In this document: positions 36,901-62,028 of the stretch, piece by piece
How positions within the stretch are numbered: the stretch's first letter is position 1
Layout: each line of letters opens with the position of its first letter
Source: Octopus sinensis
Lineage: Eukaryota
Assembly (NCBI RefSeq): GCF_006345805.1
Contig: NC_043014.1
Location: 7,254,001-7,318,000, forward strand
Reading direction: 5' to 3'
DNA: 64,000 nucleotides
The notes under the pieces: generated by a model
What the model was told of the DNA's origin: nothing
The model's database searches: none
What the model saw: the letters and a program-made list of their open reading frames with translations, nothing else
Translations under genes and position numbers: made by a program

Positions 36901-39900
36901 ACCTAAGTCTGCCCACTAAATCCTCATCATCATTATTCGACCGTGGTCGAGACAATGGAATTTACCATGCTACGCCAGACTTCACGGTCCATCATAGCAT
37001 TACGGAGGTCCCGTTGCTGGATGCCTGATTCCCTGGAGATTACATCAGGGTAGGAGAGTGTGCACCCTCTGGTATTGCGAGTAGATGGCTTCCAGAGGAG
37101 AAGAGTAGAAATTGTTTCGTTTTCAGCTCTACAACAATGTCCAGCAAACTGGACTCTCCTACCTTTCACAAGAGATGACACAGGTGGTAGTTTCCCATAT
37201 ATTTGCATTTTGGTTGGATGACGCTTCCACGAGAGATTTTGAGCTCTCATAAGGAGGCGAGTGTAGGTTCCATCCAACCGCCTCTCAAATCTTTGATAAC
37301 GTCCAGGTTTCTGAGCCATGTAGTAGAATTGGTTCAACTGTGGCTTTGAAGATTTTAAGTTTGAAGTCTCTACTTAGATTTGATGACCAGATCTTATGCA
37401 TGTCATTACAGGCTGACCAGGCCATACCCTTTCTAGTTAGAAAATCTTTTTTCAGATGATGATATGTATGACCCAAGATATTTGTATGAGTATCTTGGCT
37501 CATACTCACTAAAGGCTGACCAGGGGTTAAAGAACAACAACTACTATGATAACAATGATGATGGTGATGGCCACAACACAACACTCAAAGATCAACAAGC
37601 CCCCAACGTCCAGTGGTCAGCTTGTATATACTTACAGTCACTGTGTTTTTCGTAGCACAATTGTTCAGTTTGGACAACTTCACACTGTAAAGAACACAAA
37701 AAAAAAAAAAAATTAAAAATAAGAAAGAACTGATAGCAATCATACCATTGGAAATGGAAGGTAGGAAGTGTGACAGCGGAAGCTCCCCGGTGTCATGTGA
37801 TTCACACATAAAAAGCCCCTTTCAAGTGTTGGGCCCCACGGAGGCAATGACCAATGACCGAGACCTTTGGCAACAATATGCCATGCTTGAGTTGAAGACC
37901 CATCAAGCCGAGTGAAATCATAGCCGGGGTAGATACTGGTGCCACGCAAGTGGCATGTAAAAGCACCCATTACGCTCTGCAAAGTGGTTGGCGTTAGGAA
38001 AGGCATCCAACCAGAGAAACCATGCCAAATCAGACTGGAGTCTGGTGCAGCCCCTCAGCTTACCAGCCCTGGTCAAAAAGTTAAACCCATGCCAGAATGG
38101 ACAATGGACGTTAAAAGCACCTTTTTGATGTAAATAATTTTTGGTGTTAACATGGTCTGATTTGAACTTTTTCTACTACGGAAGGAAGAGCAAGCCTTCT
38201 TTTATCACACTCTCAATTTTGGTCAACTTGCGCCGCAGGGTCTCGGAGGAGATAGTGCTAGTTGAAGGCTACCAAATCTGCCACACACACAGACAACTTC
38301 AGCTTTATATATAAAGATATATATTTATGTATATAAATACACATATACATATATACATACATAGATATATGTACACAGGCACGTATACACATATACGGTG
38401 GCACATCGTGCTGGTGATACGTAAAAGGCACAATCCGATCGTGGCTGTTGCCAGCCTCACCTGGCCCCTGTGCCGGTGGCATGTAAAAAGCACCATCCGA
38501 TCGTGGCCATTTGCCAGTACCGCTTGACTGACCCCTGTGCCAGTAGCACGTAAAAAGCACCCACTACACTCATGGAGTGGTTGGCATTAGGAAGGGCATC
38601 CAGCCGTAGAAACATTGCCAGATCAGACTGGGCCTGGTGCAGCCATCTGGCTTCCCAGACCCCAGTTGAACCGTCCAACCCATGCTAGCAAGGAAAGTGA
38701 ACGCTAAATGATGATGATGATGATGATGATGATGACACAAAGTCATTTCTGTGAATGTGTGCCCAATTTGAATTACAAAAAGGTACTAACCGAAAGAATC
38801 CTTTCGATGTGTTGACTGCACACAGAGTCCCAATTTCCAGTTTCTCTGTGGGGGAAAATAATTAAGAAAAGAAACAAAGAGAATAACAATTAAATGAATA
38901 TAGTTAATTTAAGTTTAAGTTTAAGTTAATTTTTTGGCTCAAAAAGCAAAAAGCAAGGCCATGTAGGGGGACATGGAGTTATGTACAGGGTGGTGTTCAT
39001 GCAAAGAGTTCAGGCCATTTAAGGTCAAGGGAGACTTTGAACCGAGCGGTCGTCGGCATCTTCACCATCTCGTCCGGCAGCTTATTCCACGGATCCGCAA
39101 CCCGGACGGAGAAAGCCCCTCTCTTTCGATTGAGATGAAATCGTCGCAGATAGAGCTTTTCGGAGTGACCCCGCAGCCAACGCTCTGGAGCAGGAGTGAA
39201 GAACAGCTCTTTCGAGAGGTTACACTTTCCGCTTATGATGTTGTGAGCAAGAATGAGATCACCACGGCGTCGTCGTTTTTCTAGAGAATAAAGGTCGAGC
39301 GTCTTCAGCCTTGCACGTAAAACAAGCAAACAATACGTTTAATGTGCACTGTTCTAATGCATATGAATGAAGACGGTTGCATCAAGAAGTGCCGATGTCT
39401 AATCGCGGAGAGAATGTGTGGAATGGGTAGATCCAGGAAGACATGGGATGAAGTGGTAAGAAAGTCAAAGAGGGGATGACAGAGAACCGAGACTTCTAGA
39501 GGTTTGCTGTACTCGAGAAGACTGTATCAGGACAATTAGCCCCAGTCAAGGCGGCGCTGGCAATGGCCACGTTCGGATGGTGCTTTTTATGTGCCACTGG
39601 CACAGGCCTCACAGCTAAAATTTCCATTTGATTTTTCAAACCAAATCAAATCCAATATCAGAAAGCAGAACCAAAATCGAAGTTGATCAACATCAATGGA
39701 AATTGCAGCTGTGGTACCAGTGCCGGTGACAAGTAAGCGAACCATCTGATCGTGGCCGTTGCCAGCACCGTCCCGACCAGCTTCCGTGCCGGTGGCACGT
39801 AAAAGCACCATCCGTTCGTGTCCGTTGCCAGCCTTGCCTGGCCCCCATGCCGGTGGGACGTAGCACCATCCGTTCGTGGCCGTTGCCAGCCTCGTCTGGC

Positions 39901-42900
39901 CCCCGTGCCGGTGGCATGTAAAAAGCACCATCCGATCATGGTCGTTGCCAGCCTCGCCTGGCCCCCGTGCCGGTGGCACGTAAAAAGCACCATCCGTCCG
40001 TGGCCGTTTGCCAGCTCCGTCTGGCACCTGTGTGGGTGGCACGTAAAAAGCACCCACTACACTCATGGAGTGGTTGGCGTTAGGGAGGGCATCCAGCTGT
40101 AGAAACACTGCCAGATCAGACTGGAGCCTGGTGCAGCCTTTTGGCTTCCCAGACCCCAGTTGAACCGTCCAACCCATGCTAGCATGGAAAGTGGGCCCTA
40201 AACGATGATGATGATGATGATGATGATGATGTACTTGACTCAATAGGTCTCCTCAAGCACAGTGTGTATATATATATATCATCATCATCCTTTAACGTCC
40301 GCTTTCCATGCTAGCATGGGTTGGACGATTTGACTGAGGACTGGTGAACCAGATGGCTGCGCCAGACTCCAATCTGATCCGGCAGAGCTTTCAGAGCCAG
40401 ATGCCCTTCCTAACGCCAACCACAGGATTAAACCAACAAACATCCACTTGAGCCGTGACTCTTACCAGCACATGGCCACTTGAGCCAATGTATGTCCACT
40501 GAAAACAATACAAGCACAGTTAATCCAACACATGCCCATCCAAAGGCACACGTGTACAGGTAAACATCCCCAGGTCCAGCTACAATAATACTCCACTGTG
40601 GCCCCAGACAAGTTTTCTGTACCCCCTCAGTGCATTTTAGAGAAACAACTCTGCCTAACCACATCTAAATTCAAGATAAAACAAATGATGAAAATTAAAA
40701 TAAAAAGACAAAAAAAAAAGCCTTACCCAAAGGTTTCTTGTTGGCCAGATCACAAAAGTGGGTGGCCATGCCGAGTGTAAGACTGACCAAATCACTATGG
40801 ACAGCAACAGACTTCTTTTGGCCTTGCCAGATCTCCAAGATCCTCCCAAAGAAGTGACTGGCTGACTTTACATGGAGGACCATAATCTGAAAGGTAAATA
40901 TAGAAGAGATAACATGGAGGATTCCACAAGGTGACTCCACATGGGGGACCATAATCGGAAAGGCAAATACCGAAGAAATAACATGGAGGACCATAATCTG
41001 AAAGGCAAACACTGAAGAAATAACATGGAGGATTCCTCATGGAGGATTCCTCATGGAGGATTCCTCATGGAGGACCATAATCTGAAAGGCAAATACTGAA
41101 GAAATAACATGGAGGACCCCTCATGGAGGACCATAATCTGAAAGGCAAATAATGAAGAAATAACATGGAGGATTCCTCATGGAGGATTCCTCATGGAGGA
41201 CCATAATCTGAAAGGCAAATATAGAAGAAATAACATGGAGGACTCCTCATGGATGGCCGTAATCTGAAAGGCAAATAATGAAGAAATAACATGGAGGACC
41301 ATAATCTGAAAGGCAAATATAGAAGAAATAACATGGAGGATTCCTCATGGAGGATTCCTCATGGAGGACCATAATCTGAAAGGCAAATAATGAAGAAATA
41401 ACATGGAGGACCATAATCTGAAAGGCAAATAATGAAGAAATAACATGGAGGACCCCTTATGGAGGACCATAATCTGAAAGGCAAATATAGAAGAAATAAC
41501 ATGGAGGACTCCTCATGGATGGCCGTAATCTGAAAGGCAAATAATGAAGAAATAACATGGAGGACCATAATCTGAAAGGCAAATATAGAAGAAATAACAT
41601 GGAGGACCCCTCATGGAGGACCATAATCTGAAAGGCAAATACATAAGAAGTAACATGGAGGATTCCTCATGGAGGACCATAATCTGAAAGGCAAATATTG
41701 AAGAAATAACATGGAGGACCATAATCTGAAAGGCAAATACTGAAGAAAAACATGGAGGATTCCTCATGGAGGACCATAATCTGAAAGGCAAATATGAAGA
41801 AAAACATGGAGGACCCCTCATGGAGGACCATAATCTGAAAGGCAAATACATAAGAAGTAACATGGAGGATTCCTCATGGAGGACCATAATCTGAAAGGCA
41901 AATATTGAAGAAATAACATGGAGGACCATAATCTGAAAGGCAAATACTGAAGAAATAACATGGAGGATTCCTCATGGAGGACCATAATCTGAAAGGCAAA
42001 TATTGAAGAAATAACATGGAGGACCCCTCATGGAGGACCATAATCTGAAAGGCAAATACTGAAGAAATAACATAGAGGATTCCTCATGGATGGCCATAAT
42101 CTGAAAGGCAAACATAGAAGAAATAACATGGAGGACTCCACATGGAGGACCATAATCTGAAAGGCAAATATTGAAGAAATAACATGGAGGACCCCTCATG
42201 GAGGACCATAATCTGAAAGGCAAATACTGAAGAAATAACATGGAGGATTCCTCATGGAGGACCATAATCTGAAAGGCAAATACTGAAGAAATAACATGGA
42301 AGACTCCTCATGAAAGGGTGTATGTGTGTGTATATGTATGTGTGCATACATGCGTGCGCATGCATGTGTATATGCGTGTGTATACAGAGGCATGTGTGTA
42401 TGTGAGGAGGGTATGTGTATGCATGTGTGTATATGTGTGTGCTTTTTTTTCCTTGTTTTGACATCAAATGGTAGTTATAAACGAACATCACTGCCGTACA
42501 AACTGTGTTATTCATTTCTAATATTCTCCGAGAACATGTTTGGCCATGTGGAGATGTATTACCTCACCAGGAAACAGGCGAGGGTTAGGGACAGGAAAGG
42601 GGTCAAGCCATAGAAAACGTGCCTCAGCAAACTCCATCTGACCATTGCAAGCATGGAAAACTAGACATTAAAACAATGACGATGATGATGATGGTGGTGG
42701 TGGTGGTGGTGGTGGTGGAGGTAATAATGGTGATGTTGGTGATGGTAGTGGTGATGAAGATGATGATGATGATGATGCTCTTGATGGTGGTGGTTGCGGT
42801 CGTGGTGGTGGATAATGATGATGATGATGATGGTTGTAGTGATGGTGAAGATGGTGACGATGATGATGGTGGTGGTGGTGGTGGTGGTGATGGAGGAGGC

Positions 42901-43155
42901 ATTAATGGTGATGTTGGTGATGGTAGTGGTGGTGGTGATGATGATGATGCTCTTGATGGTGGTGGTAGTGGTGATGATGGTGGTTGTGGTTGTGGTGGTG
43001 GATAATGATGATGATGATGATGATGGTTGAGCGAAACTCGCGCTCTCGCCCACGTACAGTGGTGATGATGGTGATGGTAGCAGTGATGGTGATGTTGGTG
43101 ATGGTAGTGATGATGATGATGATGCTCTTGATGAAGGTCGTAGTGGTGATGGTGA

Positions 43156-43189
<34 letters not shown>

Positions 43190-43206
43190 GGTAGTGGTGA
43201 TGATGA

Positions 43207-43245
<39 letters not shown>

Positions 43246-43248
43246 TGA

Positions 43249-43287
<39 letters not shown>

Positions 43288-44748
43288 TGGTGATGATGAT
43301 GATGGTTGTAGTGATGGTGACGATGATGACGGTGGTGGTGGCAGCAGCAACGACGATAGTGGTGGTGGTGATGGTGTTGATGATGATAATTGTGATGATG
43401 ATGATGACGACGACAACGACAATGACATCACTTACCCTCACATCTCCTTGATGAGGCAGCAGGATGTGTTCGTCGCTGCATCCATTCAAATCAACCCCTG
43501 GCAAAACGCTATGGCGCTGGTTGCAGTTGGAATAGCTCCTGAAACAGACAGAAGCACAAGAAATACAGTCGTTGCGGAACAAGAGAAGGAAGAGGTGTAG
43601 GAGAGGCGGACGGTATGGAGTGGCTGGGTGGTAAGTAGCTTGTTTACCAACCCCAAGGTTCCGGGTTCAGTCCCACTGCATCATGGAACCTTGGGCAAGT
43701 GTCTTCTACTATAGCCTCGGGCCGTCCAAAGCCTTGTGAGTGGATTAGGTAGACGGAAACTGAAAGAAGCCTGTCGTATATATGTAAATATATATATATT
43801 TATAGGCGCAGGAGTGGCTGTGTAGTAAGTAGCTTGCTTACCAACCACATGGTTCCGGGTTCAGTCCCACTGCGTGGAACCTTGGGCAAGTGTCTTCTAC
43901 TATAGCCTCGGGCCGTCCAAAGCCTTGTGAGTGGATTAGGTAGACGGAAACTGAAAGAAGCCTGTCGTATATATGTAAATATATATATATTTATAGGCGC
44001 AGGAGTGGCTGTGTAGTAAGTAGCTTGCTTACCAACCACATGGTTCCGGGTTCAGTCCCACTGCGTGGAACCTTGGGCAAGTGTCTTCTACTATAGCCTC
44101 AGGCCGTCCAAAGCCTTGTGAGCGGATTTGAAAGAAGCCCGTCGTATATATGTATATATATATATATGTGTGTGTGTGTATGTTTGTGTGTCTGTGTTTG
44201 TCCCCCTAGCATCGCTTGACAACCGATGCTGGTGTGTTTACATTTCCGTAACTTAGCGGTTCGGCAAAAGAGACGGATAAAATTACATCAGCCCCGGGCC
44301 GACCAATGCCTTGTGAGTGGATTTGGTAGACAGAAACTGAAAGAAGCCCATCATATATATGTGTGTGTGTTGTGTGTGTGTGTGTGTTTGTGTGTCTGTG
44401 TTTGTCCCCCTAGCATTGCTTGACAATTGATGCTGATGTGTTTACATTTCCATCCCTTAGCGGTTCGGCAAAAGAGACCGATAAAATAAGTACTAGGCAT
44501 ACAAAGAATAAGTCCCGGGGTCGATTTGCTCAACTGAAGGCGGTGCTCCAGCATGGCCGCAGTCAAATGACTGAAACAAGTAAAAGAGTAAAAGAGTAAA
44601 GAGTATAAGGAAGGTCCACTGGTCGACCACCCATGCAAATAACCAAAACAAACAAAAATAATGAACCATACCTGCATTTTCCATACATTTTAATGTTATA
44701 ACACAGAGCATTATCTGGGTTCCGTTCGTTCTCCTGGAAAAGAAAATG

Positions 44749-44795
<47 letters not shown>

Positions 44796-44798
44796 GAA

Positions 44799-44834
<36 letters not shown>

Positions 44835-45253
44835 GAAAATGATAATAATAGTCCCTTAGTGGCTGACGATATGTGCATCTCTGATCACGAGCAGAAGTAG
44901 TGGGGGAGCATCATAGCCTTGTGTTGAGAGGGATTCTTTGGGGTTTAAATAATTCACCTCTGGAAACATGGGTGGTTCTTTCAACATCCTTAAACAACCC
45001 TTATTCAGGGACCTTTTGAGCGGGATGGGCTACTCAACCTGAAGAAAATTCTAACTGGGCCCCACCTGCAAGGTCATGTGCTGTTTATCTTGATAAGAGA
45101 TCACCATGTCGCGCACATATGGTTGTGATGCATGTGCCTAGTGTACCCTTATCAGACGGGTAGTCATGATGGGTATATTGGGCTTCGTATATTTTACCCC
45201 AGTGTCACTTTGATGGCATGCACTGCTCTCTCACTCAATAATAATAATCACTC

Positions 45254-45311
<58 letters not shown>

Positions 45312-45631
45312 GTCCTGATGCAGTACCAGGCAGTGGCTCTCATGGCTTTTGATCTTAACTGATTGGAAGTGTTATCATGTACATTGTTTTGTCTTGGTAT
45401 AAAAGATGGGCCACAGCAAATATTCTGCTCAATACCACAGATTTGCTTGTCAGTTGGATGACCTTAACCAGTTGAGCATGTCCCTTAGTGGCTGACGATA
45501 TGTGCATCTCTGATCACGAGCAGAAGTAGTGGGGGAGCATCATAGCCATGTGTTGAGAGGGATTATTTTTGAGGTGTGAATAATTCACCTCTGGAAACAT
45601 GGATGTTTCGATCAACATCCTTAAACAATCC

Positions 45632-45673
<42 letters not shown>

Positions 45674-48600
45674 CTATCACCATCACCACCACCGCGAGTA
45701 GATGGCTTCCAGAGGAGAAGAGTAGAAATTGCCTCGTTTTCAGCTCTACAACAATGTCCAGCAAACTGGACTCTTCTACCTTTCACAAGAGATGACACAG
45801 GTGGTAGTTTCCCATATATTTGCATTTTGGTTGGATGACACTTCCACGAGAGATCTTGAGCTCTCGTAAGGAGGCGAGTGTAGGTTGAAGTACAACAGAA
45901 GGGCAAGAAGAGATGTCTTACCGTAGGAGAGACATGTGGTGACACCTGTTGGAAAACAGAGAGACGATGGTGGTTAAGGTGTGTCAGGATGTACTCCCAG
46001 GTAACAGAAAGGCGAATATAAGAGGAGTCAAGTGAAATCATAGCTGTGGTCGATGCTGGTGCCACATAACCAGCACCCATGCTGGTGGCACACAAAAGGT
46101 ACCCACTTGGAGTGGTTGGCATTTAGGAATGGCATCCAGCCATAGAAACCAGGCTGAATCAGACTGGAACCTGGTACAGCTCTCCGGCTTACTAGTTTTC
46201 GGTCAAACCGTCCGACCCGTGCTAGCATGGGAAATGGAGGTATTATTATTTTTGCCTGTAATTGAAAAAGGTATTATAAAAGGAGAAAGGGGCTCTCTAG
46301 CCCGCTTTTGACCAGGCTCCCGTGGCTTTTATGGGGTTTTTTCCACATGAGACCTTTTCTTTTTTCGAAGCGTCTCCTCTATTGGGAGTTTTGTAAATTG
46401 TTCAATTGTTTCGTTGTTGTAAAGCGGGACTTTTTTCTTTCGAAAAAGGGACAAAACCTTTTGTAAGCTTTCATCCTGTTTTGTCCCTTTGTTTTCTAAT
46501 CATGTTTGTCAGCCCTTGTGGCCAATAAAAAGAATTAATTATTATTATTGTTGTTGTTGTTGTTGTTGTTGTTGTTATTGTGGTGGTGATAATGATGATG
46601 GTGGTGGTGGTGGTGGGGACGGTGGTGATGATGATGGCGATGATGGTGGTGGTGATGATGATGGTGGTGGGGACGGTGGTAATGGTGGTGGTGGTGATGG
46701 CGATGATGGTGGTGGTGATGATGATGGTGATGGCGATGATGGTGATGGTAGTGTTGATGATGATGATAATGATGGTGGTGGTGGTGGTGATGGTGGTGGT
46801 GGTGGTGATGGTGATGATGATGGTGGTGGTGGTGGGGACGGTGGTGATGATGATGGTAATGGTGGTGGTGGTGATGGCGATGATGGTGATGGTGGTGGTG
46901 GTGATGATGATGGTGGTGGGGACGGTGGTGGTGGTGGTGGTGATGGCGATGATGGTGGTGGTGGTGGTAGTGTTGATGATGATGATAATGATGGTGGTGG
47001 TGGTGGTGGTGGCGATGGTGGCGGTGATGGTGGTGGTGATGATGATGGTGGTGGTGGTGATGGTGGTGATGATAATGATGATAGAGAGGATTAGACAAGG
47101 TGAGTGAACCGTTATTGAATTAGTGCAGAATGCCGTAGCAGGATACAGTGTTAGAATAAGAAGAGAATGCAACGGTAGAATGAAGACTTACTTCTTGTAT
47201 TGAAGAGAAAAACTTGATGGTTTCGTCCCTGTGTTGACCGCTGCTGTTGTTCAACAATAAAGACTTCAGACTTTTCACTTTCTTTAAATCCATCTTACTC
47301 ATCAGTATGTAAGATTTACCGAGTCGCAAAGGCACCTGGGAAAATAATTAATATCCTTAAATCTTTCAGTCAAATGACAAAGAAGCCCCTAGATTTACCG
47401 AGTCGCAAAGGCACCTGGGAAAATAATAAATGCCTTAAATCTTTAAGAAAGAAGCCCCTAGATTTACCGAGTCGCAAAGGCACCTGGGAAAATAATTAAT
47501 ATCCTTAAATCTTTCAGTCAAATGACAAAGAAGCCCCTAGATTTACCGAGTCGCAAAGGCACCTGGGAAAATAATAAATGCCTTAAATCTTTAAGAAAGA
47601 AGCCCCTAGATTTACCGAGTCGCAAAGGCACCTGGGAAAATAATAAATGCCTTAAATCTTTAAGAAAGAAGCCCCTAGATTTACCGAGTCACAAAGGCAC
47701 CTGGGAAAATAATAAATGCCTTAAATCTTTCAGTCAAATGACAAAGAAGCCCCTAGATTTACCGAGTCGCAAAGGCACCTGGGAAAATAATAAATGCCTT
47801 AAATCTTTAAGAAAGAAGCCCCTAGATTTACCGAGTCGCAAAGGCACCTGGGAAAATAATTAATATCCTTAAATCTTTCAGTCAAATGACAAAGAAGCCC
47901 CTAGATTTACCGAGTCGCAAAGGCACCTGGGAAAATAATAAAGCCTTAAATCTTTAAGAAAGAAGCCCCTAGATTTACCGAGTCGCAAAGGCACCTGGGA
48001 AAATAATAAATGCCTTAAATCTTTAAGAAAGAAGCCCCTAGATTTACCGAGTCACAAAGGCACCTGGGAAAATAATAAATGCCTTAAATCTTTGAGTCAA
48101 ATGAGAAAAAAGCCCCCAGATTTACCGAGTCGCAAAGGCACCTGGGAAAATAATAAATGCCTTAAATCTCTAAGAAAGAAGCCCCTAGATTTACCGAGTC
48201 ACAAAGGCACCTGGGAAAATAATAAATGCCTTAAATCTTTGAGTCAAATGAGAAAGAAGCCCCCAGATTTACCGAGTCGCAAAGGCACCTGGGAAAATAA
48301 TAAATGCCTTAAATCTTTAAGAAAGAAGCCCCTAGATTTACCAAGTCGCAAAGGCACCAGGGAAAATAATAAATGCCTTAAATCTTTGAGTCAAATGAGA
48401 AAGAAGCCCCTAGACTTACCAAGTCGCAAAGGCACCTGGGAAAATAATTAATGCCTTAAATCTTTGAGTCAAATGAGAAAGAAGCCCCTAGATTTACCGA
48501 GTCGCAAAGGCACCTGGGAAAATAATAAATGCCTTAAATCTTTAAGAAAGAAGCCCCTAGATTTACCGAGTCACAAAGGCACCTGGGAAAATAATAAATG

Positions 48601-51600
48601 CCTTAAATCTTTGAGTCAAATGAGAAAGAAGCCCCTAGATTTACCATGTCGCAAAGGCACCTGGGAAAATAATAAATGCCTTAAATCTTTGAGTCAAATG
48701 GGAAAGAAGCCCCTAGATTTACCGAGTCGCAAGGCCACCTGGGAAAATAATAAATGCCTTAAATCTTTGAGTCAAATGAGAAAGAAGCCCCTAGATTTAC
48801 CGAGTCGCAAAGGCACCTGGGAAAATAATAAATGCCTTAAATCTTTGAGTCAAATGAGAAAGAAGCCCCTAGACTTACCAAGTCGCAAAGGCACCTGGGA
48901 AAATAATAAATGCCTTAAATCTTTGAGTCAAATGAGAAAGAAGCCCCTAGACTTACCAAGTCGCAAAGGCACCTGGGAAAATAATAAATGCCTTAAATCT
49001 TTGAGTCAAATGAGAAAGAAGCCCCTAGACTTACCGAGTCGCAAAGGCACCTGGGAAAATAATAAATGCCTTAAATCTTTGAGTCAAATGAGAAAGAAGC
49101 CCCTAGATTTACCGAGTTGCAAAGGCACCTGGGAAAATAATTAATGCCTTAAATCTTTGAGACAAATGAGAAAGAAGCCCCTAGATTTACCGAGTCGCAA
49201 AGGCACCTGGGAAATTAATAAGTGCCTTAAATCTTTGAGTCAAATGAGAAAGAAGCCCCCAGATTTACCGAGTCACAAAGGCACCTGGGAAAATAATTAA
49301 TATCCTTAAATCTTTAAGAAAGAAGCCCCTAGATTTACCGAGTCGCAAAGGCACCTGGGAAAATAATAAATGCCTTAAATCTTTAAGAAAGAAGCCCCTA
49401 GATTTACCGAGTCACAAAGGCACCTGGGAAAGTAATAAATGCCTTAAATCTTTAAGAAAGAAGCCCCTAGATTTACCGAGTCACAAAGGCACCTGGGAAA
49501 ATAATAAATGCCTTAAATCTTTGAGTCAAATGAGAAAGAAGCCCCTAGATTTACCATGTCGCAAAGGCACCTGGGAAAATAATAAATGCCTTAAATCTTT
49601 GAGTCAAATGGGAAAGAAGCCCCTAGATTTACCGAATCGCAAAGGCACCAGGGAAAATAATAAATGCCTTAAATCTTTGAGTCAAATGAGAAAGAAGCCC
49701 CTAGAGTTACCAAATCGCAAAGGCACCTGGGAAAATAATAAATGCCTTAAATCTTTAAGAAAGAAGCCCCTAGATTTACCGAGTCACAAAGGCACCTGGG
49801 AAAGTAATAAATGCCTTAAATCTTTAAGAAAGAAGCCCCTAGATTTACCGAGTCACAAAGGCACCTGGGAAAATAATAAATGCCTTAAATCTTTGAGTCA
49901 AATGAGAAAGAAGCCCCTAGATTTACCATGTCGCAAAGGCACCTGGGAAAATAATAAATGCCTTAAATCTTTGAGTCAAATGGGAAAGAAGCCCCTAGAT
50001 TTACCGAATCGCAAAGGCACCAGGGAAAATAATAAATACCTTAAATCTTTGAGTCAAATGAGAAAGAAGCCCCTAGATTTACAGAGTCGCAAAGGCACCT
50101 GGGAAAATAATAAATGCCTTAAATCTTTGAGTCAAATGAGAAAGAAGCCCCTAGATTTACCGAGTCGCAAAGGCACCTGGGAAAATAATAAATGCCTTAA
50201 ATCTTTGAGTCAAATGAGAAAGAAGCCCCTAGATTTACCAAATCGCAAAGGCTCCTGGGAAAATAATTAATGCCTTAAATCTTTGAGTCAAATGAGAAAG
50301 AAGCCCCTAGATTTACCGAGTCGCAAGGCCACCTGGGAAAATAATAAATGCCTTAAATCTTTGAGTCAAATGAGAAAGAAGCCCCTAGATTTACCGAATC
50401 GCAAAGGCACCTGGGAAAATAATAAATGCCTTAAATCTTTGAGTCAAATGAGAAAGAAGCCCCTAGATTTACCGAGTCGCAAAGGCACCTGGGAAAATAA
50501 TAAATGCCTTAAATCTTTGAGTCAAATGAGAAAGAAGCCCCTAGACTTACCAAGTCGCAAAGGCACCTGGGAAAATAATAAATGCCTTAAATCTTTGAGA
50601 CAAATGAGAAAGAAGCCCCTAGACTTACCAAGTCGCAAAGGCACCTGGGAAAATAATAAATGCCTTAAATCTCTGAGTCAAATGAGAAAGAAGCCCCTAG
50701 ATTTACCGAGTCGCAAAGGCACCTGGGAAAATAATTAATGCCTTAAATCTTTGAGACAAATGAGAAAGAAGCCCCTAGATTTACCATGTCGCAAAGGCAC
50801 CTGGGAAAATAATAAATGCCTTAAATCTTTGAGTCAAATGGAAAGAAGCCCCTAGATTTACCGAATCGCAAGGCACCAGGGAAAATAATAAATGCCTTAA
50901 ATCTTTGAGTCAATGAGAAAGAAGCCCCTAGATTTACCAATCGCAAAGGCACCAGGGAAAATAATAAATGCCTTAAATCTTTAAGAAAGAAGCCCCTAGA
51001 TTTACCGAGTCACAAAGGCACCTGGGAAAATAATAAATGCCTTAAATCTTTGAGTCAAATGAGAAAGAAGCCCCTAGATTTACATGTCGCAAAGGCACCT
51101 GGGAAAATAATAAATGCCTTAAATCTTTGAGTCAAATGAGAAAGAAGCCCCTAGATTTACCGAGTCGCAAGGCCACCTGGGAAAATAATAAATGCCTTAA
51201 ATCTTTGAGTCAAATGGGAAAGAAGCCCCTAGATTTACCGAATCGCAAAGGCACCAGGGAAAATAATAAATGCCTTAAATCTTTGAGTCAAATGAGAAAG
51301 AAGCCCCTAGATTTACCAAATCGCAAAGGCACCTGGGAAAATAATTAATGCCTTAAATCTTTGAGTCAAATGAGAAAGAAGCCCCTAGATTTACCGAGTC
51401 GCAAGGCCACCTGGGAAAATAATAAATGCCTTAAATCTTTGAGTCAAATGAGAAAGAAGCCCCTAGATTTACCGAGTCGCAAAGGCACCCGGGAAAATAA
51501 TAAATGCCTTAAATCTTTGAGTCAAATGAGAAAGAAGCCCCTAGATTTACCGAGTCGCAAAGGCACCTGGGAAAATAATAAATGCCTTAAATCTTTGAGT

Positions 51601-54600
51601 CAAATGAGAAAGAAGCCCCTAAATTTACCGATTCACAAAGGCACCTGGGAAAATAATAAATGCCTTAAATCTTTGAGTCAAATGAGAAAGAAGCCCCTAG
51701 ACTTACCAAGTCGCAAAGGCACCTGGGAAAATAATAAATGCCTTAAATCTTTGAGTCAAATGAGAAAGAAGCCCCTACATGGTCACTAGACATGCTAAAA
51801 ATAACAACTAATACATGTACTAATCAGGTTCTTAGAAAATTGAAGGACAAAGTGAATATTTCGGGTTTAGTCTGTCTTTATTTATTGTTACTGAAGACTC
51901 AGAGTGGCTGAACAGTTTGAGAAGTTTGCTTTGCAACCATGAAGTCCTAGGTTCAATCCTACAAGGTGGCATCTTGGGAAAGTGTTTTCAACCATAGTCG
52001 TGAACTGAACCAAGGTTTGTGAATGAAACTAGGTAGATGGCAACTGTACCGAAGCCTGTCATATGGGCTATCATCAGCAGTGATGCCATGTGCGTGGATC
52101 TCTGTGATGCTCTGTCACCATCCAATTCTTCAAATTGGGAGTCTGAGGAGGCTGTGATGATTCTTTCATGTGTGTCTGTGTTTGTCTCCCTAGCATTGCT
52201 TGACAACCGATGCTGGTGTGTTTACGTCCCCGTCACTTAGCGGTTCGGCAAAAGAGACCAATAGAATAAGTACTGGGCTTACAAAAGAATAAGTCCCGGG
52301 GTCGAGTTGCTCGATTAAAGGCGGTGCTCCAGCATGGGCGCAGTCAAAATGACTGAAACAAGTAAAAAGTAAAAAAGAAAAAAAATATATATACATACAT
52401 ATGTATGTGTATGTCTGTGTGTCTGTGTTCGTCAAAGCCAACCACTGTTTAAACAACCGGTGTTGGTTTGTTTACACCCCTGTAACTCAGCAGTTCGCCA
52501 AAAGAAACTGATAGAATAAGTACCAGACTTAAAACGGAGTGAGATAAATAAATACTGGGCGGCGGCGGGGGGGGGGCATTCTGTTTGAGTGAAACTCTTG
52601 AAGGCAGTGCTGCAGCATGGGCAGAGCCCAATGACTGAAGCAAGTAATAAACAAAAACAAAAAAAAAAAAACAAAGTAAAAGATTCACAGAAAATAAGAC
52701 GGATCTTTTCCTTTTGAACGGCAGACAATTTCTGATTAACTAAACACTTTAAAACTTTGTATACTGCTAGAATGTGTCAAAAGAAAACATTTTTTTCTCT
52801 TGGCTTTCTTTGAGAAAATTGTAATTTGTTTGTTTAACGTAGTTTAATTTTTCGAATTTTAACCAATCCTATGCTCTCTTTTGAGCTAAAATCATTTGCC
52901 GCGTCTAAAACTGAGACAACATCCTGTAACTAACCCTAAACCTCCCCCCTAACCCTAACCCTAAATTTTTTTTTCTTAATTGTTAAATTAATTTAATTGT
53001 TGCGCGTGCAAAAAAACCTAAAGCAATGGAATTTGATTAATTTAACAATTTAGAAAAAAAAATTAGGGGTTAGTGTTAGGGGGGAGGTTTAGGGTTAGTT
53101 ACAGGATGTTGTCTCAGTTTTAGATGTAGCAAATGATTTTAGTTGAATGGAGGTAATCGATTGGTTAAAATTGCCGAAATACTCGGATTTTCAGACGAAA
53201 TATCTTACAAACTATAGAATTTTCTCAATAAAACCAAGAGAAAATGATGTTTTATAAACACATTCTACCAGTATACGAAGTTTAAAAGTGTTTAGTTAAC
53301 TTGGTTAAAATTGCCGAAATGCTCAGATTTTCAGACAAAATATTGTACAAACTATAGAATTTTCTCAATAAAGCCAAGAGAAAAAGATGTTTTATAAACA
53401 CATTCTACCAGTATACGAAGTTTAAAAGTGTTTAGTTAACTTGGTTAAAATTGCCGAAATGCTTGGATTTTCAGACGAAATATCTTACAAACCATAGAAT
53501 TTTCTCAATAAAACCAAGAGAAAATGATGTTTTATAAACACATTCTACCAGTATACGAAGTTTAAAAGTGTTTAGTTACCTTGGTTAAAATTGCCGAAAT
53601 GCTTGGATTTTCAGACGAAATATCTTACAAACTATAGAATTTTCTCAATAAAACCAAGATAAATGATGTTTTATAAACACATTCTACCAGTATACGAAGT
53701 TTAAAAGTGTTTAGTTAACTAGAAATTGTGTTGATATCTGCCGTTCAAAAGGAAAAGATCCAAAAAGACAAAACAACACAAACAACAAACAAACAAACAG
53801 GGGAATGTGTTCCAGTTCTTAATCTGTACTTACCGTTTTATCGTTGTAATGGGGGTAATATTTACTCATCGTCTGCATTCTAAGACCGACGTGGACCTTT
53901 TTAGATGGGAACTGATAATGAACAATACAGGTGGCATCGGAAATCTTCAGGTCACAAAGAACACTATCAGGACACACTATAAAATAACAAGAACAATAAT
54001 AATGATGATAATGATGATGATGATGATGATGATGATGACGGTTTCAAATTTTGCCACAAGGCAGCAATGCTCGTATGGGTCAGAAGGAATTTGTTCATTG
54101 CTTGTACCAATGAAATACCTATTTCTTTACTACCCACAAGGGGCTAAACACAGAAGGGACAAACAAGGACAGACAAACGGATTAAGTCGATTACATCGAC
54201 CCTAGTGCGTAACTGGTACTTTATTTATCGACCCTGAAAGGATGAAAGGCAAAGTCGACCTCGGCGGAATTTGAACTCAGAACGTAACGGCAGACGAAAT
54301 ACCTATTTCTTTACTACCCACAAGGGGCTAAACATAGAGGGGACAAACAAGGACAGACAAACGAATTAAGTCGATTACATCGGCCCCAGTGCGTAACTGG
54401 TACTTAATTTATCGACCCAGAAAGGACGAAAGGCAAAGTCGACATTGGTGGAATTTGAATTCACAACGTAAAGACAGATGAAATACTTATTTCTTTACTA
54501 CTCACAAGGGGCTAAACACAGAGAGGACAAACAAACGAATTAAGTCGATTACATCGGCCCCAGTGCGTAACTGGTACTTAATATATCGACCCAGAAAGGA

Positions 54601-55142
54601 TGAAAGGCAAAGTTGACTTCGGCGGAATTTGAACTCAGAGCGTAACGACAGACGATACACCGCTAAGCATTTCACCCGGCGTGCTAACGTATCTGCCAGC
54701 TCGCCGCCTTTAAATACCAATGAAATACAATTGAATATCCACGGCACATTAAGCACACCATCCGAGCGTGATCGTTGCCGCGTCGCCTTACTAGCACATG
54801 TGCTGGTGGCACATGAAACCTTCAAGTGAGGTCGTCGCCAGTGCCGCTGGACTGGCTCCTGTGCAGGTGGCACATAAAAAGCTCCATTTGGACGTGGCTG
54901 TTGCTAGTACCACCAAACTGGCCCTCGTGCTGGTGACACTCTTTTACTCTTTTACTTGTTTCAGTCATTTGACTGCGGCCATGCTGGAGCACCGCCTTTA
55001 ATCAAGCAACTCGACCCCGGGACTTATTCTTTTTGTAAGCCCAGTACTTATTCTATCGGTCTCTTTTTGCCAAACCGCTAAATGACGGGGATGTAAACAC
55101 ACCAGCATCGGTTGTCAAGCAATGCTAGGGGGACAAACACAG

Positions 55143-55181
<39 letters not shown>

Positions 55182-55704
55182 CACATATACGACAGGCTTC
55201 TTTCAGTTTCCGTCTACCAAATCCACTCACAAGGCATTGGTCGGCCCGGGGCTATAGCAGAAGACACTTGCCCAAGATGCTATGCAGTGGGACTGAACCC
55301 GGAACCATGTGGTTGGTTAGCAAGCTACTTACCACACAGCCACTCCTGCGCCCATTCATTTTATTTCCAGTTTGATTTAATCGCACCCAGAATGTGGCTG
55401 ATTTTCACACTACTGACCCTGAAAGATCTTAAGGTAATGATGTCAACCCTAGCAACCAAGTGGATGAAAAAAGCAGAAGCAACAGGAAAAAAAAAAAGGG
55501 ATTTTTTGGTAAATAATGGATATGCCATGAAGTTAGTAAAATTTACCTAGGAATCGGTAAGGCTCATTTTCAGACAGGGGTCGATGCCATTGCTTCGAGG
55601 ATTCCTCACGTTGGGCTAAATACGAAGAGCTCCAGACTCCAATAGCAGCTGATGTCAGGTAATTGTTCAATAACTGAATAATAATAATAATAATGAAAAT
55701 GATG

Positions 55705-55744
<40 letters not shown>

Positions 55745-58700
55745 CAACAACTGAGCAAATATAAAGATCTTGAAATAGAAATCAGCAAAATGTGGAACCT
55801 GAAGACTAAAACAATACCTGTTGTCATAGGTGCCCTGGGAATGATAGCAAAAGGGGCTGATTGCTACCTAACTCAGATACCAGGAAACCCCAAAATGGCA
55901 GAAATTCAAAAGATAGTGCTCATGGGAACTGCTCATATCCTACGCAAAATACTCTCTATGTCATCCCAAGGTTTAAAACAAACTTTTTTTAAACTTTTTT
56001 TATTTATTTATTTATTAGACATTCACTAATACAACACCAAAAAAAAAACCCCAAATATATGGCACACTAGGCATAACAACAATGTGAACTTCCAGCCTGT
56101 TGTCTCTTGAGGTCTCTGGGTGAGACTTGGAGCCAACTTGTACAGACATAAAGCAAAAGTCAAACATAGAATCATAATTCTTTTCTTTTATTCTTTTACT
56201 AGTTTCAGTCATTTGACTGCGACCATGCTGGAGCACCGCCTTTAGTCGAGCAAATCGATTCCGGGACTTTGTAAGTCCAGTACTTATTCTATCGGTCTCT
56301 TCTGCTGAACCGCTAAGTGATAATGTTGGTGGTGGTGGTAGTGATGATGGTGGTGGTGGTGGTGGTAGTGATAATGTTGGTGGTGGTGGTAGAGATGATG
56401 TTGGTGGTGGTGGTGGTGATGTTGATGGTGGTGATGGTGGTGGTGGTGATAATGATGGTGGTGGTGGTGGTGGTAGTGATAATGTTGGTGGTGGTGGTGG
56501 AAATGTTGATGGTGGTGGTGGTGATAATGTTGGTGGTGGTGGTGGTGGTGGTGGTGTGATGTTGATGGTGGTGGTGGTGGTTGTTATGTGATTGTCATGG
56601 TGGTGGTGATTGATGATTATGACGATGATGGTGATAGTGATGGTGGTAGCGATTGCAGTGGTGATGACGAGCATGACAACAACGATGCTGGTGATGACAG
56701 CGTCATTCTCCCAGGTCAAACAGAAGACATGATGCTCTCCAGCTCCCCAGACCTCACAAATGTGTACCGTATCACCGACACTACAACTTCCATAGTAACC
56801 CACTTGTGATGATGAGGAAGGAGCAGAAGAGGCAGAAGAGGGGAGATGTACTTACAAATAAAACCTTGTGACAACTCTGATCCCCATCGGTGAAGATGAT
56901 TACTTTCTCGCCTTGGATGGTCAGGTCTGGAAGGAGTTCGATTAGTTTCCTCTCACGGCCATCTTCCGTTGTAATCATTGGAATCTGAGAGAAAAAAAAA
57001 GTAAAAAGGCTTAGTAGAAGACACTTGCTCAAGGTGCCACATAGTAGAATTGAACCTGAAACTTAGGGGTCAGACAGTAAACTTTTTAACCCAATAGCCA
57101 TGCTTAGCTACACCAGCACATTCACTCACACAGACCACACTACACTACATGGTAATCGCTATTTGAGATTACAGTCTCCAATTCTACATGAATTACAGAC
57201 TGTAAAAATGAAATAAAAAATGAAATAAAATGAAATAAAAAAGAAATCAAAAAGAAATACAATGAAAGCCAACTGCATCTCACTCACCTGTTTAACTCGG
57301 CCGTAGGTGGATGCTTCTATCATGTCCGTAATGACAATAACAACATCCTCCAGTGCATTCATGGCAAATGTTCTGACATGAGACGTCCAATTACTACCAA
57401 AGATCATCACCTGGTTTTGCAGATTAGATCTCTGCTTCGAGAGCAGCACTTGCTTCTTCAGGGACCGCATAAGATCTCGAATCTGTAATGAAAAACGGAA
57501 ATAAAATAAAGGTAAGATGACATACACATTCATCATCATCATTTAGTGTCCGCTTTCCATGCTAGCATGGGTTGGACGGTTCAACTGGGGTCTGTGAAGC
57601 CGGAAGGCTTCATCAGGCCCAGTCAGATCTGGCAGTGTTTCTACGGCTGGATGCCCTTCCTAACGCCAACCACTCCGTGAGAGTAGTGGATGCTTTTTAC
57701 GTGCCACCCGCACAGGTGCCAGACAGAGCTGGCAAATGGCCATGAACGGATGGTGCTTTTATGTGCCACCGGCACGGGGGCCAGGCGAGGCTGGCAACGG
57801 ACACGAACAGATGGTGCTTTTACGTGCCACTGGCACGGGGGCCAGGCGAGGCTCATTCATAAAATCTTCTGGCACATTTACAAAGTGATTATGTCATGGG
57901 CTGTTCTTTCTCGCCACTGGAGAACAATTCCTTTCAGGTGAGCACGTGTTTCTAATGCACTTTATTCCTTAGAGTGAGGGGACTTTGGGACACTTGGTGT
58001 TTCAACATTGCTGTATATCTTCAGTCAAAGCTACCCTGGACTAATGAATCTAACAACTTTTCCTTTCAGATGAATGTGTGTTCATAATACATTTGATTAT
58101 TTAACATAAGGAGACTTTGTGACACCTGGTGTTTCAATATCATTGTACCTCCTCAGTCAAAGCTAACCCAGACTAATGAATCGAACAAGAATAGCAATGA
58201 GCATGCACAAGGTGAATTCAAAAAAATGTCTGAATTTATTTTTAACAGTCAAAACTAATGTTGTGTGGGAAGTAACACCCACGCCTTGGCTGGCTTCCGT
58301 GCCGGTGGCACGTTAAAAGCACCGACCGATCGTGGCCGATGCCAGACTCCCCTAGCACCTGTACAGGTGGCACGTAAAAAGCACCCACTACACTCGTGGA
58401 GTGGTTGGCGTTAGGAAGGGCATCCAGCTGTAGAAACACTGCCAGATCAGACTGGAGCCTGGTGCAGCCCCTGGCTTCCCAGACCCCAGTCGAACCGTCC
58501 AACCCATGCTAGCATGAAAAACGGACGCTAAACGATGAGGATGATTGAATGTATTGTGTGAAGATATTGCATCAAGTTTTGCCAAAAGCTTGATGGTGCT
58601 CCAAGCTCGAAACCTTCCAGAAAATTCAGCAGACTTTTGGCAATGATGCCATGGACAAAAGTCAGATAAAGGAGTGGTGCATGTCTTGCTAGTATATTAT

Positions 58701-60004: not shown

Positions 60005-62028
60005 TAATAATAATAATAACAATAATAATAATAATAATAATGATGATCCTTTCTACTGGAAGCACAAGGCTTCAAATTTGGGGGTGGGGATGAAGTAATT
60101 ACATCGACCCCAGTACGTAACTGATACTTATTTAATCGACCCTGAAATGATGAAAGGCAAAGTCAAGCTCAGCAGAATTTGAACTCAGAATGTAGAGACA
60201 GACAAAATGTCGCTAAGCATTTTGTCCAGCATGTCAACACTTCTGTCAGCTGGCCGCTTATATAATAACAAAAAAATGGACTTCTTCATGTCATCTGATA
60301 GGATAGAAAATGATTTTTTTCTTTTTAACCCTTTCTTTACTGTATTTATTTTGAGATGCTCTGTGTGTCTTTTAATTACTTTAAATATAACAAAGTATTT
60401 AGTAAAATAACTTAGTTACCATTAAGCTAGTGTTAGGAACATAAATTGTGACTAAGGTTTGGTGGAAGATTCTAATTCAGAACTTTTGAAAACAAGACAT
60501 TTGTACTCAGAGCCAGAAGCAGTTTCAGCCGGGTTGGTATCAAAAGGATTAAGAATTGTTTCTCTATTATATATATTTTAACCCTTTTGTTACCATATTT
60601 CTGTTGAGATGCTCTGTGTTTCTTTCAATTACTTTAAATATAACAAAGTATTTAGTAAAATAACTTAGTTACCATTAAGCTAGTGTTAGGAACATAAATT
60701 GTGACTAAGGTTTGGTGGAAGATTTTAATTCAGAACTTTTGAAAACAAGACATTTGTACTCAGAGCCAGAAGCAGTTTCAGCCGGGTTGGTATCAAAAGG
60801 ATTAAGAATTGTTTCTCTATTATATATATTTTAACCCTTTTGTTACCATATTTCTGTTGAGATGCTCTGTGTTTCTTTCAATTACTTTAAATATAACAAA
60901 GTATTTAGTAAAATAACTTGGTTATCATTCAGCTAGTGTTTGGAACATAAATTGTGACTAAGGTTTGGTAGAAGATTTTAATTCAGAACTTTTGAAAACA
61001 AGACATTTGTACTCAGAGCCAGAAGCAGTTTCAGCCGGGTTGGTATCAAAAGGATTAAGAATTGTTTCTCTATTATATATATTTTAACCCTTTTGTTACC
61101 ATATTTCTGTTGAGATGCTCTGTGTTTCTTTCAATTACTTTAAATATAACAAAGTATTTAGTAAAATAACTTGGTTATCATTCAGCTAGTGTTAGGAACA
61201 TAAATTGCGACTAAGGTTTGGTGGGAGATTTTAATTCAGAACTTTTGGAAACAAGACATTTGTACTCAAGAGCCAGAGGCGGTTTCAGCCAGGTTGGTAT
61301 CAAAAGGGTTAAATAACAAAACAAACAAAGCAATGAAATACTTGCATCACTGTAGAAGTCTTCAAGAATGATATCAGCTTCATCAATAATCTGTTAACGA
61401 GGAATCAGAGAAAAAAAAAACCGATATAAAGGGATTACTGTGATTATGGTTGGGCAGAGACAAACAGACAGAAATATTTAGATTTTGCATCATCATCATC
61501 ACTACAATTACCACTTTTCCATCCTTGCATGGGTCTGACAGAATTTGCTGAGTCTTATTTGCTGCAGCTGGATGCTCCTACTGTTAGCAGCCTTCACTTG
61601 TTTCCAAGCACGCTAATGCTTCCCCATAGTCAGACATGTTTTCACGGAGGATTGTAAACAAAGGACACCATTTATATGATGATAACACTTATTTACAACT
61701 AATGCGTGATATCAAGACAAGGACGCACATAATTACAAGGCTAATATTGACTAAAAGCCATAGAAGATATTGCTGAAGGCGCCATCAAAGACATAGGCTG
61801 TAAAATAAATACAACAGCATAGATTTTGTATCATCATCATCACTATAATTACCACTTTTCCATCCTTGCATGGGTCTGACAGAATTCGCTGAGTCTTATT
61901 TGCTGCAGCTGGATGCTCCTCCAGTTATCAACCTTCACTTGTTTCCAAGCATGCTAATACTCCCCCATGGCCGGGCATGTTTTCACAGAGGATTGTAAAC
62001 ACAGGACATGCATGTTCATCTCTTTCTT

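What the first reader, a model, noticed from the sequence alone, without database searches (positions are those of the whole stretch)
40871..51777. Two independent minisatellites in one gene are both amplified 3' splice sites ('acceptor arrays')
Seen: the only two large tandem arrays here that are not transposon-derived have unrelated sequences but the same architecture. Each unit is the end of an intron (pyrimidine tract plus AG) joined to the first 13-24 nt of the next exon. The functional acceptor is the final copy transcribed, and the distal end of each array continues into unique intron sequence. Inference: either 3' splice-site regions are hotspots for repeat birth in this genome, or such arrays are tolerated or used as splicing modulators (decoys, NMD-coupled dosage control, recursive splicing). 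I do not recall this described as a recurrent system. Two cases could still be coincidence.
Basis: partly seen in the sequence, partly recalled or inferred. Interest (0 to 1): 0.85.

Follow-up and report, generated by a model that had tools for sequence, protein, structure and literature searches.

The report
Minisatellites that reiterate splice acceptors
Two tandem arrays in an octopus-like TDRD12 gene really are dozens of copies of an intron end plus exon start, the acceptor-side mirror of a known human oddity, and most likely a tolerated by-product rather than a regulatory device.

Summary
The minus strand carries a TDRD12 orthologue. Array 1 (40871-42312) has 26 copies of a 42-nt unit. Array 2 (47312-51777, not 47663) has 59 copies of a 78/69-nt unit. 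Each unit is the last 26 or 54-55 nt of an intron plus the first 16-17 or 24 nt of the next exon. With the last AG of each array, exons E6-W10 splice into one open frame. That frame aligns almost without gaps to six TDRD12 orthologues, and both intron positions are identical in a scallop. The upstream copies are 24 and 51 intact pseudo-acceptors. All but one would give a frameshift or a stop if used.

The donor-side version is already described in human F7, IFI6, CBS, LMNB2 and PDGF. The scallop TDRD12 gene has eight junction-spanning arrays, seven at donors, against about 3 expected (P about 0.01). Reiteration is therefore recurrent but not acceptor-specific. I found no evidence of function.

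Best reading: tolerated junction-spanning minisatellites, with the exon-contiguous copy chosen by exon definition. No RNA data or other cephalopod genomes could be reached.

The parts
40871..42312 (-). Array 1: 26 units of 42 nt (26 nt of intron 3' end plus 16 nt of exon W10 start), with 23 interspersed 14-nt sub-units. 25 units have an intact TTTCAG|ATTA.
40887..40888 (-). AG of the functional acceptor of exon W10, in the last array copy.
   Evidence: Open spliced frame. Gapless alignment GDVR|[13 protein letters not shown] against GEVK|VLVTNVVDASHYF. Same intron position in scallop.
40727..40886 (-). Exon W10 (160 nt), the start of the second Tudor domain. Donor is TTTGG|GTAAGG. It matches the scallop 160-nt exon.
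40940..40981 (-). Penultimate 42-nt copy, whose AG is lost (CAG to CCG). It is followed by a scrambled 27-nt piece.
47312..51777 (-). Array 2: 59 units of 78 or 69 nt (54-55 nt of intron 3' end plus 24 nt of exon W7 start). 52 units have an intact CCCAG|G and 7 have lost the AG. 56 carry a donor-like GGTAAAT or GGTAAGT 16 nt after the AG.
47336..47337 (-). AG of the functional acceptor of exon W7, in the last array copy.
   Evidence: An in-frame TAA lies 4 codons upstream and the conserved SYIL starts at the array/unique junction. Same intron position in scallop.
47192..47335 (-). Exon W7 (144 nt). Donor is CAAGAA|GTAAGT. It matches the scallop 141-nt exon.
47313..47496 (-). The 184 nt that include the functional acceptor and 23 exonic nt. 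They are 100% identical to the copy 148 nt upstream (47461-47644), so this is the youngest higher-order duplication.
53834..53976 (-). Exon E6 (helicase C-terminal part). Its donor ACG|GTAAGT pairs with the array-2 acceptor across a 6.5-kb intron.
43436..43538 (-). Exon W9 (CCCH zinc-finger part). Its donor AGG|GTAAGT pairs with the array-1 acceptor across a 2.5-kb intron made almost wholly of tandem repeats.
44672..44733 (-). Exon W8 (62 nt). An (ATT)35 microsatellite ends 11 nt upstream of its acceptor.

Best explanation
The two arrays are junction-spanning minisatellites inside two ancient introns of a TDRD12 orthologue.

In each case a short segment straddling the intron 3' end (polypyrimidine tract plus AG) and the first 16-24 nt of the next exon was tandemly duplicated. 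It was then amplified by unequal exchange or replication slippage to 26 and 59 copies (inferred).

Only the copy that is contiguous with the rest of the exon can give an in-frame mRNA, so productive splicing must use the last AG (shown from frame and homology). The other 24 and 51 intact AGs are intronic pseudo-acceptors.

The spliceosome most likely picks the last copy by exon definition: it is the AG nearest upstream of the strong GTAAGT/GTAAGG donor, 144-160 nt away (inferred). Occasional use of nearby pseudo-sites would give transcripts with premature stops.

The arrays are most likely neutral or slightly harmful by-products that are tolerated. They are the acceptor-side mirror of the human F7/IFI6/CBS/LMNB2 donor minisatellites, not a regulatory device.
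For: Anatomy of both arrays.

Gene identity: a Tudor Pfam hit at 2e-15. Orthologues are named TDRD12.

Colinear exon map. One open frame across four junctions. Near-gapless alignment to six orthologues through both array junctions.

Intron positions, phases and exon sizes are conserved in scallop (102/45/146~143/141~144/62/160). The introns are therefore old and the arrays are lineage-specific additions.

Upstream AGs would give 14 frameshifts, 9 stops and 1 open insertion in array 1, and 51 of 51 frameshifts or stops in array 2.

Array turnover includes the functional copy (184 nt identical), as expected for an ordinary evolving minisatellite.

36% of the gene span is tandem repeat, and arrays abut donors as often as acceptors.

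Donor-side precedents exist in which only the exon-contiguous site is used (PMC1557585). Eight further junction arrays occur in scallop TDRD12.
Against: No transcript evidence could be reached, so use of the last AG rests on reading frame and homology only.

By a crude PWM the pseudo-acceptors score as well as or better than the functional ones (medians 7.6 against 8.4, and 5.9 against 3.7). They are also transcribed first, so some interference seems unavoidable. Tolerance of 25-50 such decoys is not obviously neutral.

Junction-spanning arrays are over-represented about 3-fold in the scallop gene (P about 0.01). Both locally born arrays of the window sit on junctions (P 0.0026). A purely random-seed origin does not predict either.
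Confidence: 0.65

Rival explanations
1. Splice junctions are favoured places for minisatellites in these genomes. One route is mutation: slippage at pyrimidine tracts, or transcription- or splicing-coupled damage in a germline-expressed gene. The other is persistence: the exon-contiguous copy is protected by selection, cannot be deleted, and keeps re-seeding the array. On this reading the excess is real but carries no function. This adds to the best explanation rather than excluding it.
For: Scallop TDRD12 has 8 of 31 arrays spanning a junction against 3.0-3.2 expected (P 0.008-0.011), and 7 of 26 locally born arrays against 2.5 expected (P 0.008). In the octopus window both locally born arrays span junctions (P 0.0026). 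The Fisher combination gives 2.6e-4. Microsatellites also abut the acceptors of E6 and W8 and the donors of X1-X3 and W9.
Against: The octopus P value is post hoc, because the window was flagged for this very pattern. With all arrays counted there is no excess. Only one gene in two species was examined. The fly and beetle TDRD12 loci show none. No mechanism was tested.
Confidence: 0.35
2. The arrays are used as splicing modulators. Possible modes are decoy acceptors that sponge U2AF or slow intron removal, NMD-coupled dosage control of TDRD12, or stepwise (recursive) removal of the intron.
For: There are dozens of intact acceptors of equal strength. Array-2 units also carry a donor-like GGTAAAT or GGTAAGT 16 nt after the AG, giving 3'ss-16 nt-5'ss modules. 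The copy nearest the array-1 acceptor has lost its AG, which could reflect selection against close competition.
Against: No recursive-site motif is present: the junctions read AG|GTGCCT and AG|ATTATG. A 16-nt exon is too short for ordinary exon definition. Seven array-2 copies have lost the AG at random positions. The arrays are absent from the same junctions in scallop, where different junctions carry arrays, so nothing is conserved. The known donor-side arrays are silent pseudo-sites (PMC1557585).
Confidence: 0.1
3. Artefact: the exons are mis-called, so the arrays are purely intronic and merely contain acceptor-like motifs. Alternatively, the arrays are assembly errors.
For: There are no transcript data. 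The window contains an assembly gap at 21923-22022.
Against: The conserved residues IMVLH and the seven codons before SYIL are encoded inside the last repeat units. The frame is open only with these AGs, and the scallop introns sit at exactly the same codons. The arrays show internal variant structure and diverged edges typical of real minisatellites.
Confidence: 0.03

Closest known systems
Human donor-side junction minisatellites: F7 IVS7 37-bp VNTR, IFI6 (6-16) intron 2, CBS exon/intron 13 31-bp VNTR, LMNB2, PDGF intron 4 (PMC1557585)
   Same: A tandem array whose terminal monomer spans an exon-intron boundary, so the exact splice site is reiterated many times in the intron. Only (or mainly) the exon-contiguous copy is used. 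Unit sizes are 31-100 nt and copy numbers 5-25.
   Different: Those arrays reiterate 5' splice sites, and the used copy is the first one transcribed. Here 3' splice sites are reiterated and the used copy is the last transcribed, after 25-58 equal decoys. Copy numbers here are higher. Use of the contiguous copy is inferred here, not measured.
Scallop (Ylistrum balloti) TDRD12 junction arrays, found here (L001)
   Same: Same gene and same exon-intron structure. Units are an exon end plus a splice site plus an intron start, at 37-101 nt and 2-24 copies.
   Different: Seven of the eight are at donors. None sits at the two junctions that carry arrays in the window, so these are independent events.
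CFTR intron 8 (TG)m(T)n tract at the exon 9 acceptor (from my own knowledge)
   Same: A polymorphic tandem repeat sits inside a 3' splice-site region and affects acceptor use.
   Different: That is a microsatellite within one acceptor. It does not reiterate whole acceptors or exon sequence.
Recursive splice sites and decoy exons (decoy-exon model, PMC7373989)
   Same: Splice-site-like elements inside an intron that can engage the spliceosome without contributing to the mRNA.
   Different: Recursive sites need a juxtaposed AG|GTRAGT, which is absent here. Decoy exons are single conserved elements, not arrays. No intron-retention data are available here.
NAGNAG tandem acceptors, and acceptor sites created by expanded CAG repeats (PMC10614865)
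   Same: Multiple AG acceptors in tandem.
   Different: Those are spaced 3 nt apart and made of the AG alone, with no reiteration of a pyrimidine tract plus exon start.

Membership tests
Junction-spanning minisatellite that reiterates a splice site (F7 IVS7 type) | Head-to-tail array of monomers of about 10-100 nt | tested here: met
   42-nt x26 and 78/69-nt x59
Junction-spanning minisatellite that reiterates a splice site (F7 IVS7 type) | The terminal monomer spans an exon-intron boundary | tested here: met
   16-17 nt and 24 nt of conserved coding sequence lie inside the last monomer. The boundary is fixed by frame, orthologue alignment and the scallop intron positions.
Junction-spanning minisatellite that reiterates a splice site (F7 IVS7 type) | The splice-site sequence is repeated intact in the intron | tested here: met
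   24 and 51 additional intact AG copies with the same pyrimidine tract
Junction-spanning minisatellite that reiterates a splice site (F7 IVS7 type) | The reiterated site is a 5' splice site (all described cases) | tested here: not met
   Here 3' splice sites are reiterated, so this is filed as a variant and not a member in the strict sense.
Junction-spanning minisatellite that reiterates a splice site (F7 IVS7 type) | Only the exon-contiguous copy is used physiologically | not testable with these tools
   No transcript data. Inferred because all but one upstream AG would give a frameshift or stop.
Junction-spanning minisatellite that reiterates a splice site (F7 IVS7 type) | Copy number polymorphic in the population (VNTR) | not testable with these tools
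   Only one haplotype is available. A 184-nt perfect duplicate suggests recent turnover.
Recursive splice site (ratchet point) | Juxtaposed acceptor and donor, (Y)nAG|GTRAGT | tested here: not met
   AG|GTGCCT and AG|ATTATG
Transposon-derived tandem array | The unit is also found dispersed at other sites | tested here: not met
   The units occur only inside their own arrays, whereas all other large arrays of the window are dispersed.
TDRD12 (host gene) | Tudor plus DEAD-box helicase architecture, colinear with named TDRD12 proteins | tested here: met
   Pfam Tudor hit at 2e-15. An IIDEAD exon and helicase exons are present. A profile of six orthologues hits 13 colinear exons. Orthologues are named TDRD12.

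The most novel reading that the evidence does not exclude
Minisatellites anchored on exon-intron junctions may be a systematic feature of molluscan genes, perhaps especially germline-expressed ones.

One cause could be that junctions are birth hotspots. Another is that the selectively protected exon-contiguous copy makes such arrays hard to lose.

The octopus acceptor arrays, with 25-50 equal decoys transcribed before the used site, would then show a robust 'last copy wins' rule for 3' splice-site choice. That is the opposite of the 'first copy wins' rule shown for donor arrays.
Probability: 0.3. Interest if true: 0.65.

Novelty: new variant of a known kind. Interest (0 to 1): 0.45.

Why it matters
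If the last of 26-59 identical acceptors is used faithfully, these introns are a natural experiment on how a 3' splice site is chosen among many equal competitors that are transcribed first. Human F7 served the same purpose for 5' splice sites.

The excess of junction-anchored arrays in two mollusc TDRD12 genes, if general, would reveal a bias in how minisatellites arise or persist next to exons.

There are two practical consequences. Such arrays are a trap for gene predictors, which may pick the wrong copy. They are also likely sources of copy-number-dependent mis-splicing in a piRNA-pathway gene.

Tried and rejected
- A word-indexed protein search with concatenated window exons found nothing. 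No cephalopod TDRD12 is in the collections, so orthologous octopus introns could not be compared.
- Look-ups of three scallop TDRD12 proteins and the frog protein found no record. Only Ylistrum, a beetle and a fly were retrievable.
- An alignment-based homologue search returned only 8 proteins, none from further molluscs.
- Recursive-splicing reading: rejected for lack of an AG|GTRAGT motif.
- Coding-repeat reading: rejected. Array 2 has a stop in every unit in the exon frame, and in array 1 the 14-nt inserts shift the frame.
- Transposon origin: rejected.
- Acceptor-versus-donor bias in how close arrays lie to splice sites: not seen. Counting W7 as overlapping, 4 of 14 acceptors and 3 of 14 donors have an array within 35 nt.
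- The acceptor PWM was trained on only 12 sites of the same gene and is only a rough yardstick.
- Exon W5 (between 56856 and 53976) and the exons between W10 and X11 were not located.
- Scans of the metagenome and genome-contig collections were not run, because those collections hold no cephalopod DNA.
Full report
**What is in the window**

The window is repeat-rich animal DNA. TRF finds 67 merged tandem arrays covering 20.8 kb of 64 kb.

On the minus strand lies a gene with Tudor and DEAD-box helicase exons. A Pfam scan gives Tudor PF00567 at E = 2e-15 for the exons at ~25.6 kb and 23.1 kb. An exhaustive HMMER search with concatenated exons recovered six proteins of about 2000 aa with matching architecture. 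One of them is named 'Tudor domain-containing protein 12 [Mizuhopecten yessoensis]', and close relatives are named 'ATP-dependent RNA helicase TDRD12'.

tblastn and a profile built from the six proteins hit 13 colinear minus-strand exons from 62.2 kb down to 18.4 kb. I could not verify the species.

**The arrays**

Array 1 (40871-42312) consists of 26 units of 42 nt, TTATTTCTTCAGTATTTGCCTTTCAG|ATTATGGTCCTCCATG. These are interspersed with 23 sub-units of 14 nt (AGGAATCCTCCATG) that are a nested duplication of the exonic part.

Array 2 has 59 units of 78 or 69 nt ending ...TTTATTATTTTCCCAG|GTGCCTTTGCGACTCGGTAAATCT.

Neither unit occurs anywhere else in the window. Units of every other large minisatellite array (periods 62-68, 140, 184-191, 249-254) recur at several dispersed sites and so belong to mobile or dispersed repeats.

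**Are the last copies real acceptors?**

- With splice sites E6 ACG|GTAAGT, W7 CAG|GTG...GAA|GTAAGT, W8, W9 ...AGG|GTAAGT and W10 CAG|ATT...TGG|GTAAGG, the five exons join into a single open frame of 203 codons.
- That peptide aligns to the six orthologues almost without gaps through both array junctions. The window reads ..[12 protein letters not shown]|[13 protein letters not shown].. against the Mizuhopecten protein (P0082) ..MSKYYHNSSSKEKINIDPTSYILIT.., and ..HQGDVR|[18 protein letters not shown].. against ..SGEVK VLVTNVVDASHYFVRLLE...
- The residues IMVLH, and the seven codons before the conserved SYIL, are encoded inside the last repeat unit.
- For W7 an in-frame TAA lies four codons upstream of the AG, so no other AG can serve.
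- In the scallop Ylistrum balloti TDRD12 locus (L001) I mapped 49 exons exactly. Introns sit at precisely the same codons and phase..NKEK|VADVEPTSYIL and ..GEVK|VLVTNVV.
- Neighbouring exon sizes match (102, 45, 146~143, 141~144, 62, 160).

The two introns are therefore ancient, and the arrays were added inside them in the lineage of the window.

**Consequences of the reiteration**

Array 1 holds 24 and array 2 holds 51 additional intact AG copies. Seven array-2 copies and one array-1 copy have lost the AG.

By a crude position matrix trained on the 12 other acceptors of this gene, the pseudo-sites score like the functional ones or better. The medians are 7.6 against 8.4 for array 1, and 5.9 against 3.7 for array 2.

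If an upstream AG were used and the rest retained, array 1 would give 14 frameshifts, 9 in-frame stops and one open 111-nt insertion. Array 2 would give only frameshifts or stops.

In array 1 the terminal copy carries private substitutions, and the copy next to it has CAG changed to CCG. In array 2 the 184 nt that include the functional AG and the exon start are identical to the copy 148 nt upstream. The working acceptor is therefore itself part of the youngest duplication.

Array-2 units also contain a donor-like GGTAAAT (49 times) or GGTAAGT (7 times) 16 nt after the AG.

**Is it more than chance?**

Within the window the answer depends on the null.

- 36% of the gene span is tandem repeat. 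Arrays lie within 35 nt of 3 of 14 donors. They lie within 35 nt of, or overlap, 4 of 14 acceptors, counting W7 as overlapping because TRF under-called array 2.
- If all 45 arrays are placed at random, or seeded at random, about 1.4-2.2 junction-spanning arrays are expected against 2 observed (P 0.41-0.66).
- If only the two locally born arrays are considered, the chance that both seeds straddle a junction is 0.0026, and 0.0007 for two acceptors. That class was chosen after the pattern had been seen.
- Among the 28 mapped junctions, only these two are reiterated.

**An independent test**

The scallop orthologue was fetched only to check intron positions. It turned out to carry eight junction-spanning arrays among 31.

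- Seven are at donors (exons 3, 7, 17, 19, 33, 35, 36). Their periods are 37-68 nt and copy numbers 4-24. Each unit is the last 15-57 nt of the exon, then GTAAGT or similar, then the intron start.
- One is at an acceptor (exon 15, 101 nt x2).
- Random placement or random seeding predicts 3.0-3.2 (P 0.011 and 0.008).
- Restricting to units unique to the locus gives 7 of 26 against 2.5 expected (P 0.008).
- Beetle and fly TDRD12 loci have none.
- None of the scallop arrays is at the two junctions affected in the window, so all ten events are independent.

This replication suggests a roughly three-fold excess of arrays anchored on junctions. It also shows that the phenomenon is not specific to acceptors.

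**What is known**

The donor-side architecture is established. Borensztajn et al. [quoted passage not shown] They list IFI6 (6-16), CBS, LMNB2 and PDGF as further genes with such minisatellites.

In F7 the pseudo-sites are functional but silent, because the most upstream site is selected. In IFI6 and CBS the next two pseudo-sites are also used.

In six searches of the held literature I found no natural acceptor-side counterpart. That is a limited search, not proof of absence.

Intronic minisatellites and short tandem repeats that influence splicing in other ways are known (PMC4039745; PMC10078293).

**Most likely mechanism**

Shown:
- The arrays reiterate a real acceptor and the start of a conserved exon.
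- Only the last copy is compatible with the protein.
- The arrays are lineage-specific insertions into old introns.
- They turn over like ordinary minisatellites.

Inferred:
- They arose by tandem duplication across the junction and grew by unequal exchange or slippage.
- The last copy is selected by exon definition, being the nearest AG upstream of a strong donor 144-160 nt away.
- Use of nearby pseudo-sites would feed nonsense-mediated decay.

I rate this tolerated by-product reading at 0.65. A real bias toward junctions, from a mutational hotspot or from the undeletable, selection-protected anchor copy, is compatible with it (0.35). A regulatory role has no positive evidence (0.1). Mis-called exons or misassembly are very unlikely (0.03).

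**Why the acceptor side is still of some interest**

For donor arrays the used copy is the first one transcribed. For these acceptor arrays it is the last, after dozens of equally good sites have already emerged from the polymerase.

All human cases listed in PMC1557585 and 7 of 8 scallop cases are donor-side, and the single scallop acceptor array has only two copies. Large acceptor arrays may therefore be less well tolerated, which makes two of them in one gene unusual.

**Limits**

- No RNA data, no other cephalopod genome and no population data were reachable.
- The scallop gene model is a computational annotation.
- The statistics cover one gene in two species.
- The acceptor scoring is rough.

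Noticed in passing
L001 4432-4826, 11732-13180, 26720-27537, 28808-28977, 46865-47094, 49471-50331, 52646-53533 (donors); 25343-25545 (acceptor): Scallop (Ylistrum balloti) TDRD12 carries seven tandem arrays that reiterate an exon end plus 5' splice site (37-68 nt, 4-24 copies) and one that reiterates an acceptor (101 nt x2). That is 8 of 31 arrays against about 3 expected.
   Followed up: yes
window 18452-62228: 36% of the TDRD12 gene span is tandem repeat, and several introns are almost wholly arrays. Microsatellites end 11 and 25 nt upstream of the W8 and E6 acceptors. Tandem arrays start 20-33 nt after the X1, X2 and X3 donors, and a CAT/CAC-type run starts within ~10 nt of the W9 donor.
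   Followed up: partly
window 47312-51777: Every array-2 unit also carries a donor-like GGTAAAT (49 times) or GGTAAGT (7 times) 16 nt after the AG. That makes 3'ss-16 nt-5'ss modules, and one sits inside the real exon W7 at 47319-47313.
   Followed up: partly
window 61346-61390: The 45-nt exon encoding the IIDEAD motif appears to end in a GC donor (GAT|GCAAGT). The scallop 45-nt counterpart uses GT.
   Followed up: no
window 56856-57482 versus L001 25969-26289: The scallop 321-nt exon is split in the window into 195 + 129 nt by an extra ~300-nt intron (57287-56985). This is an intron gain or loss between the lineages.
   Followed up: no
window 45517-46122, 36936-37373, 6442-6852 (minus strand): Three copies of the same retrotransposon-like ORF fragment (..[25 protein letters not shown]..) lie in introns and upstream.
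   Followed up: no
window 21923-22022: A run of 100 N (assembly gap) lies inside an intron of the gene.
   Followed up: no
window 53977-56855: The exon expected here (equivalent to the scallop 115-nt exon 17, the one with the 12-copy donor array) was not found by tblastn or the profile.
   Followed up: partly
L001 44839-45346: A 30-nt x17 array ends 10 nt upstream of a scallop acceptor (exon at 45357) without overlapping the exon.
   Followed up: no
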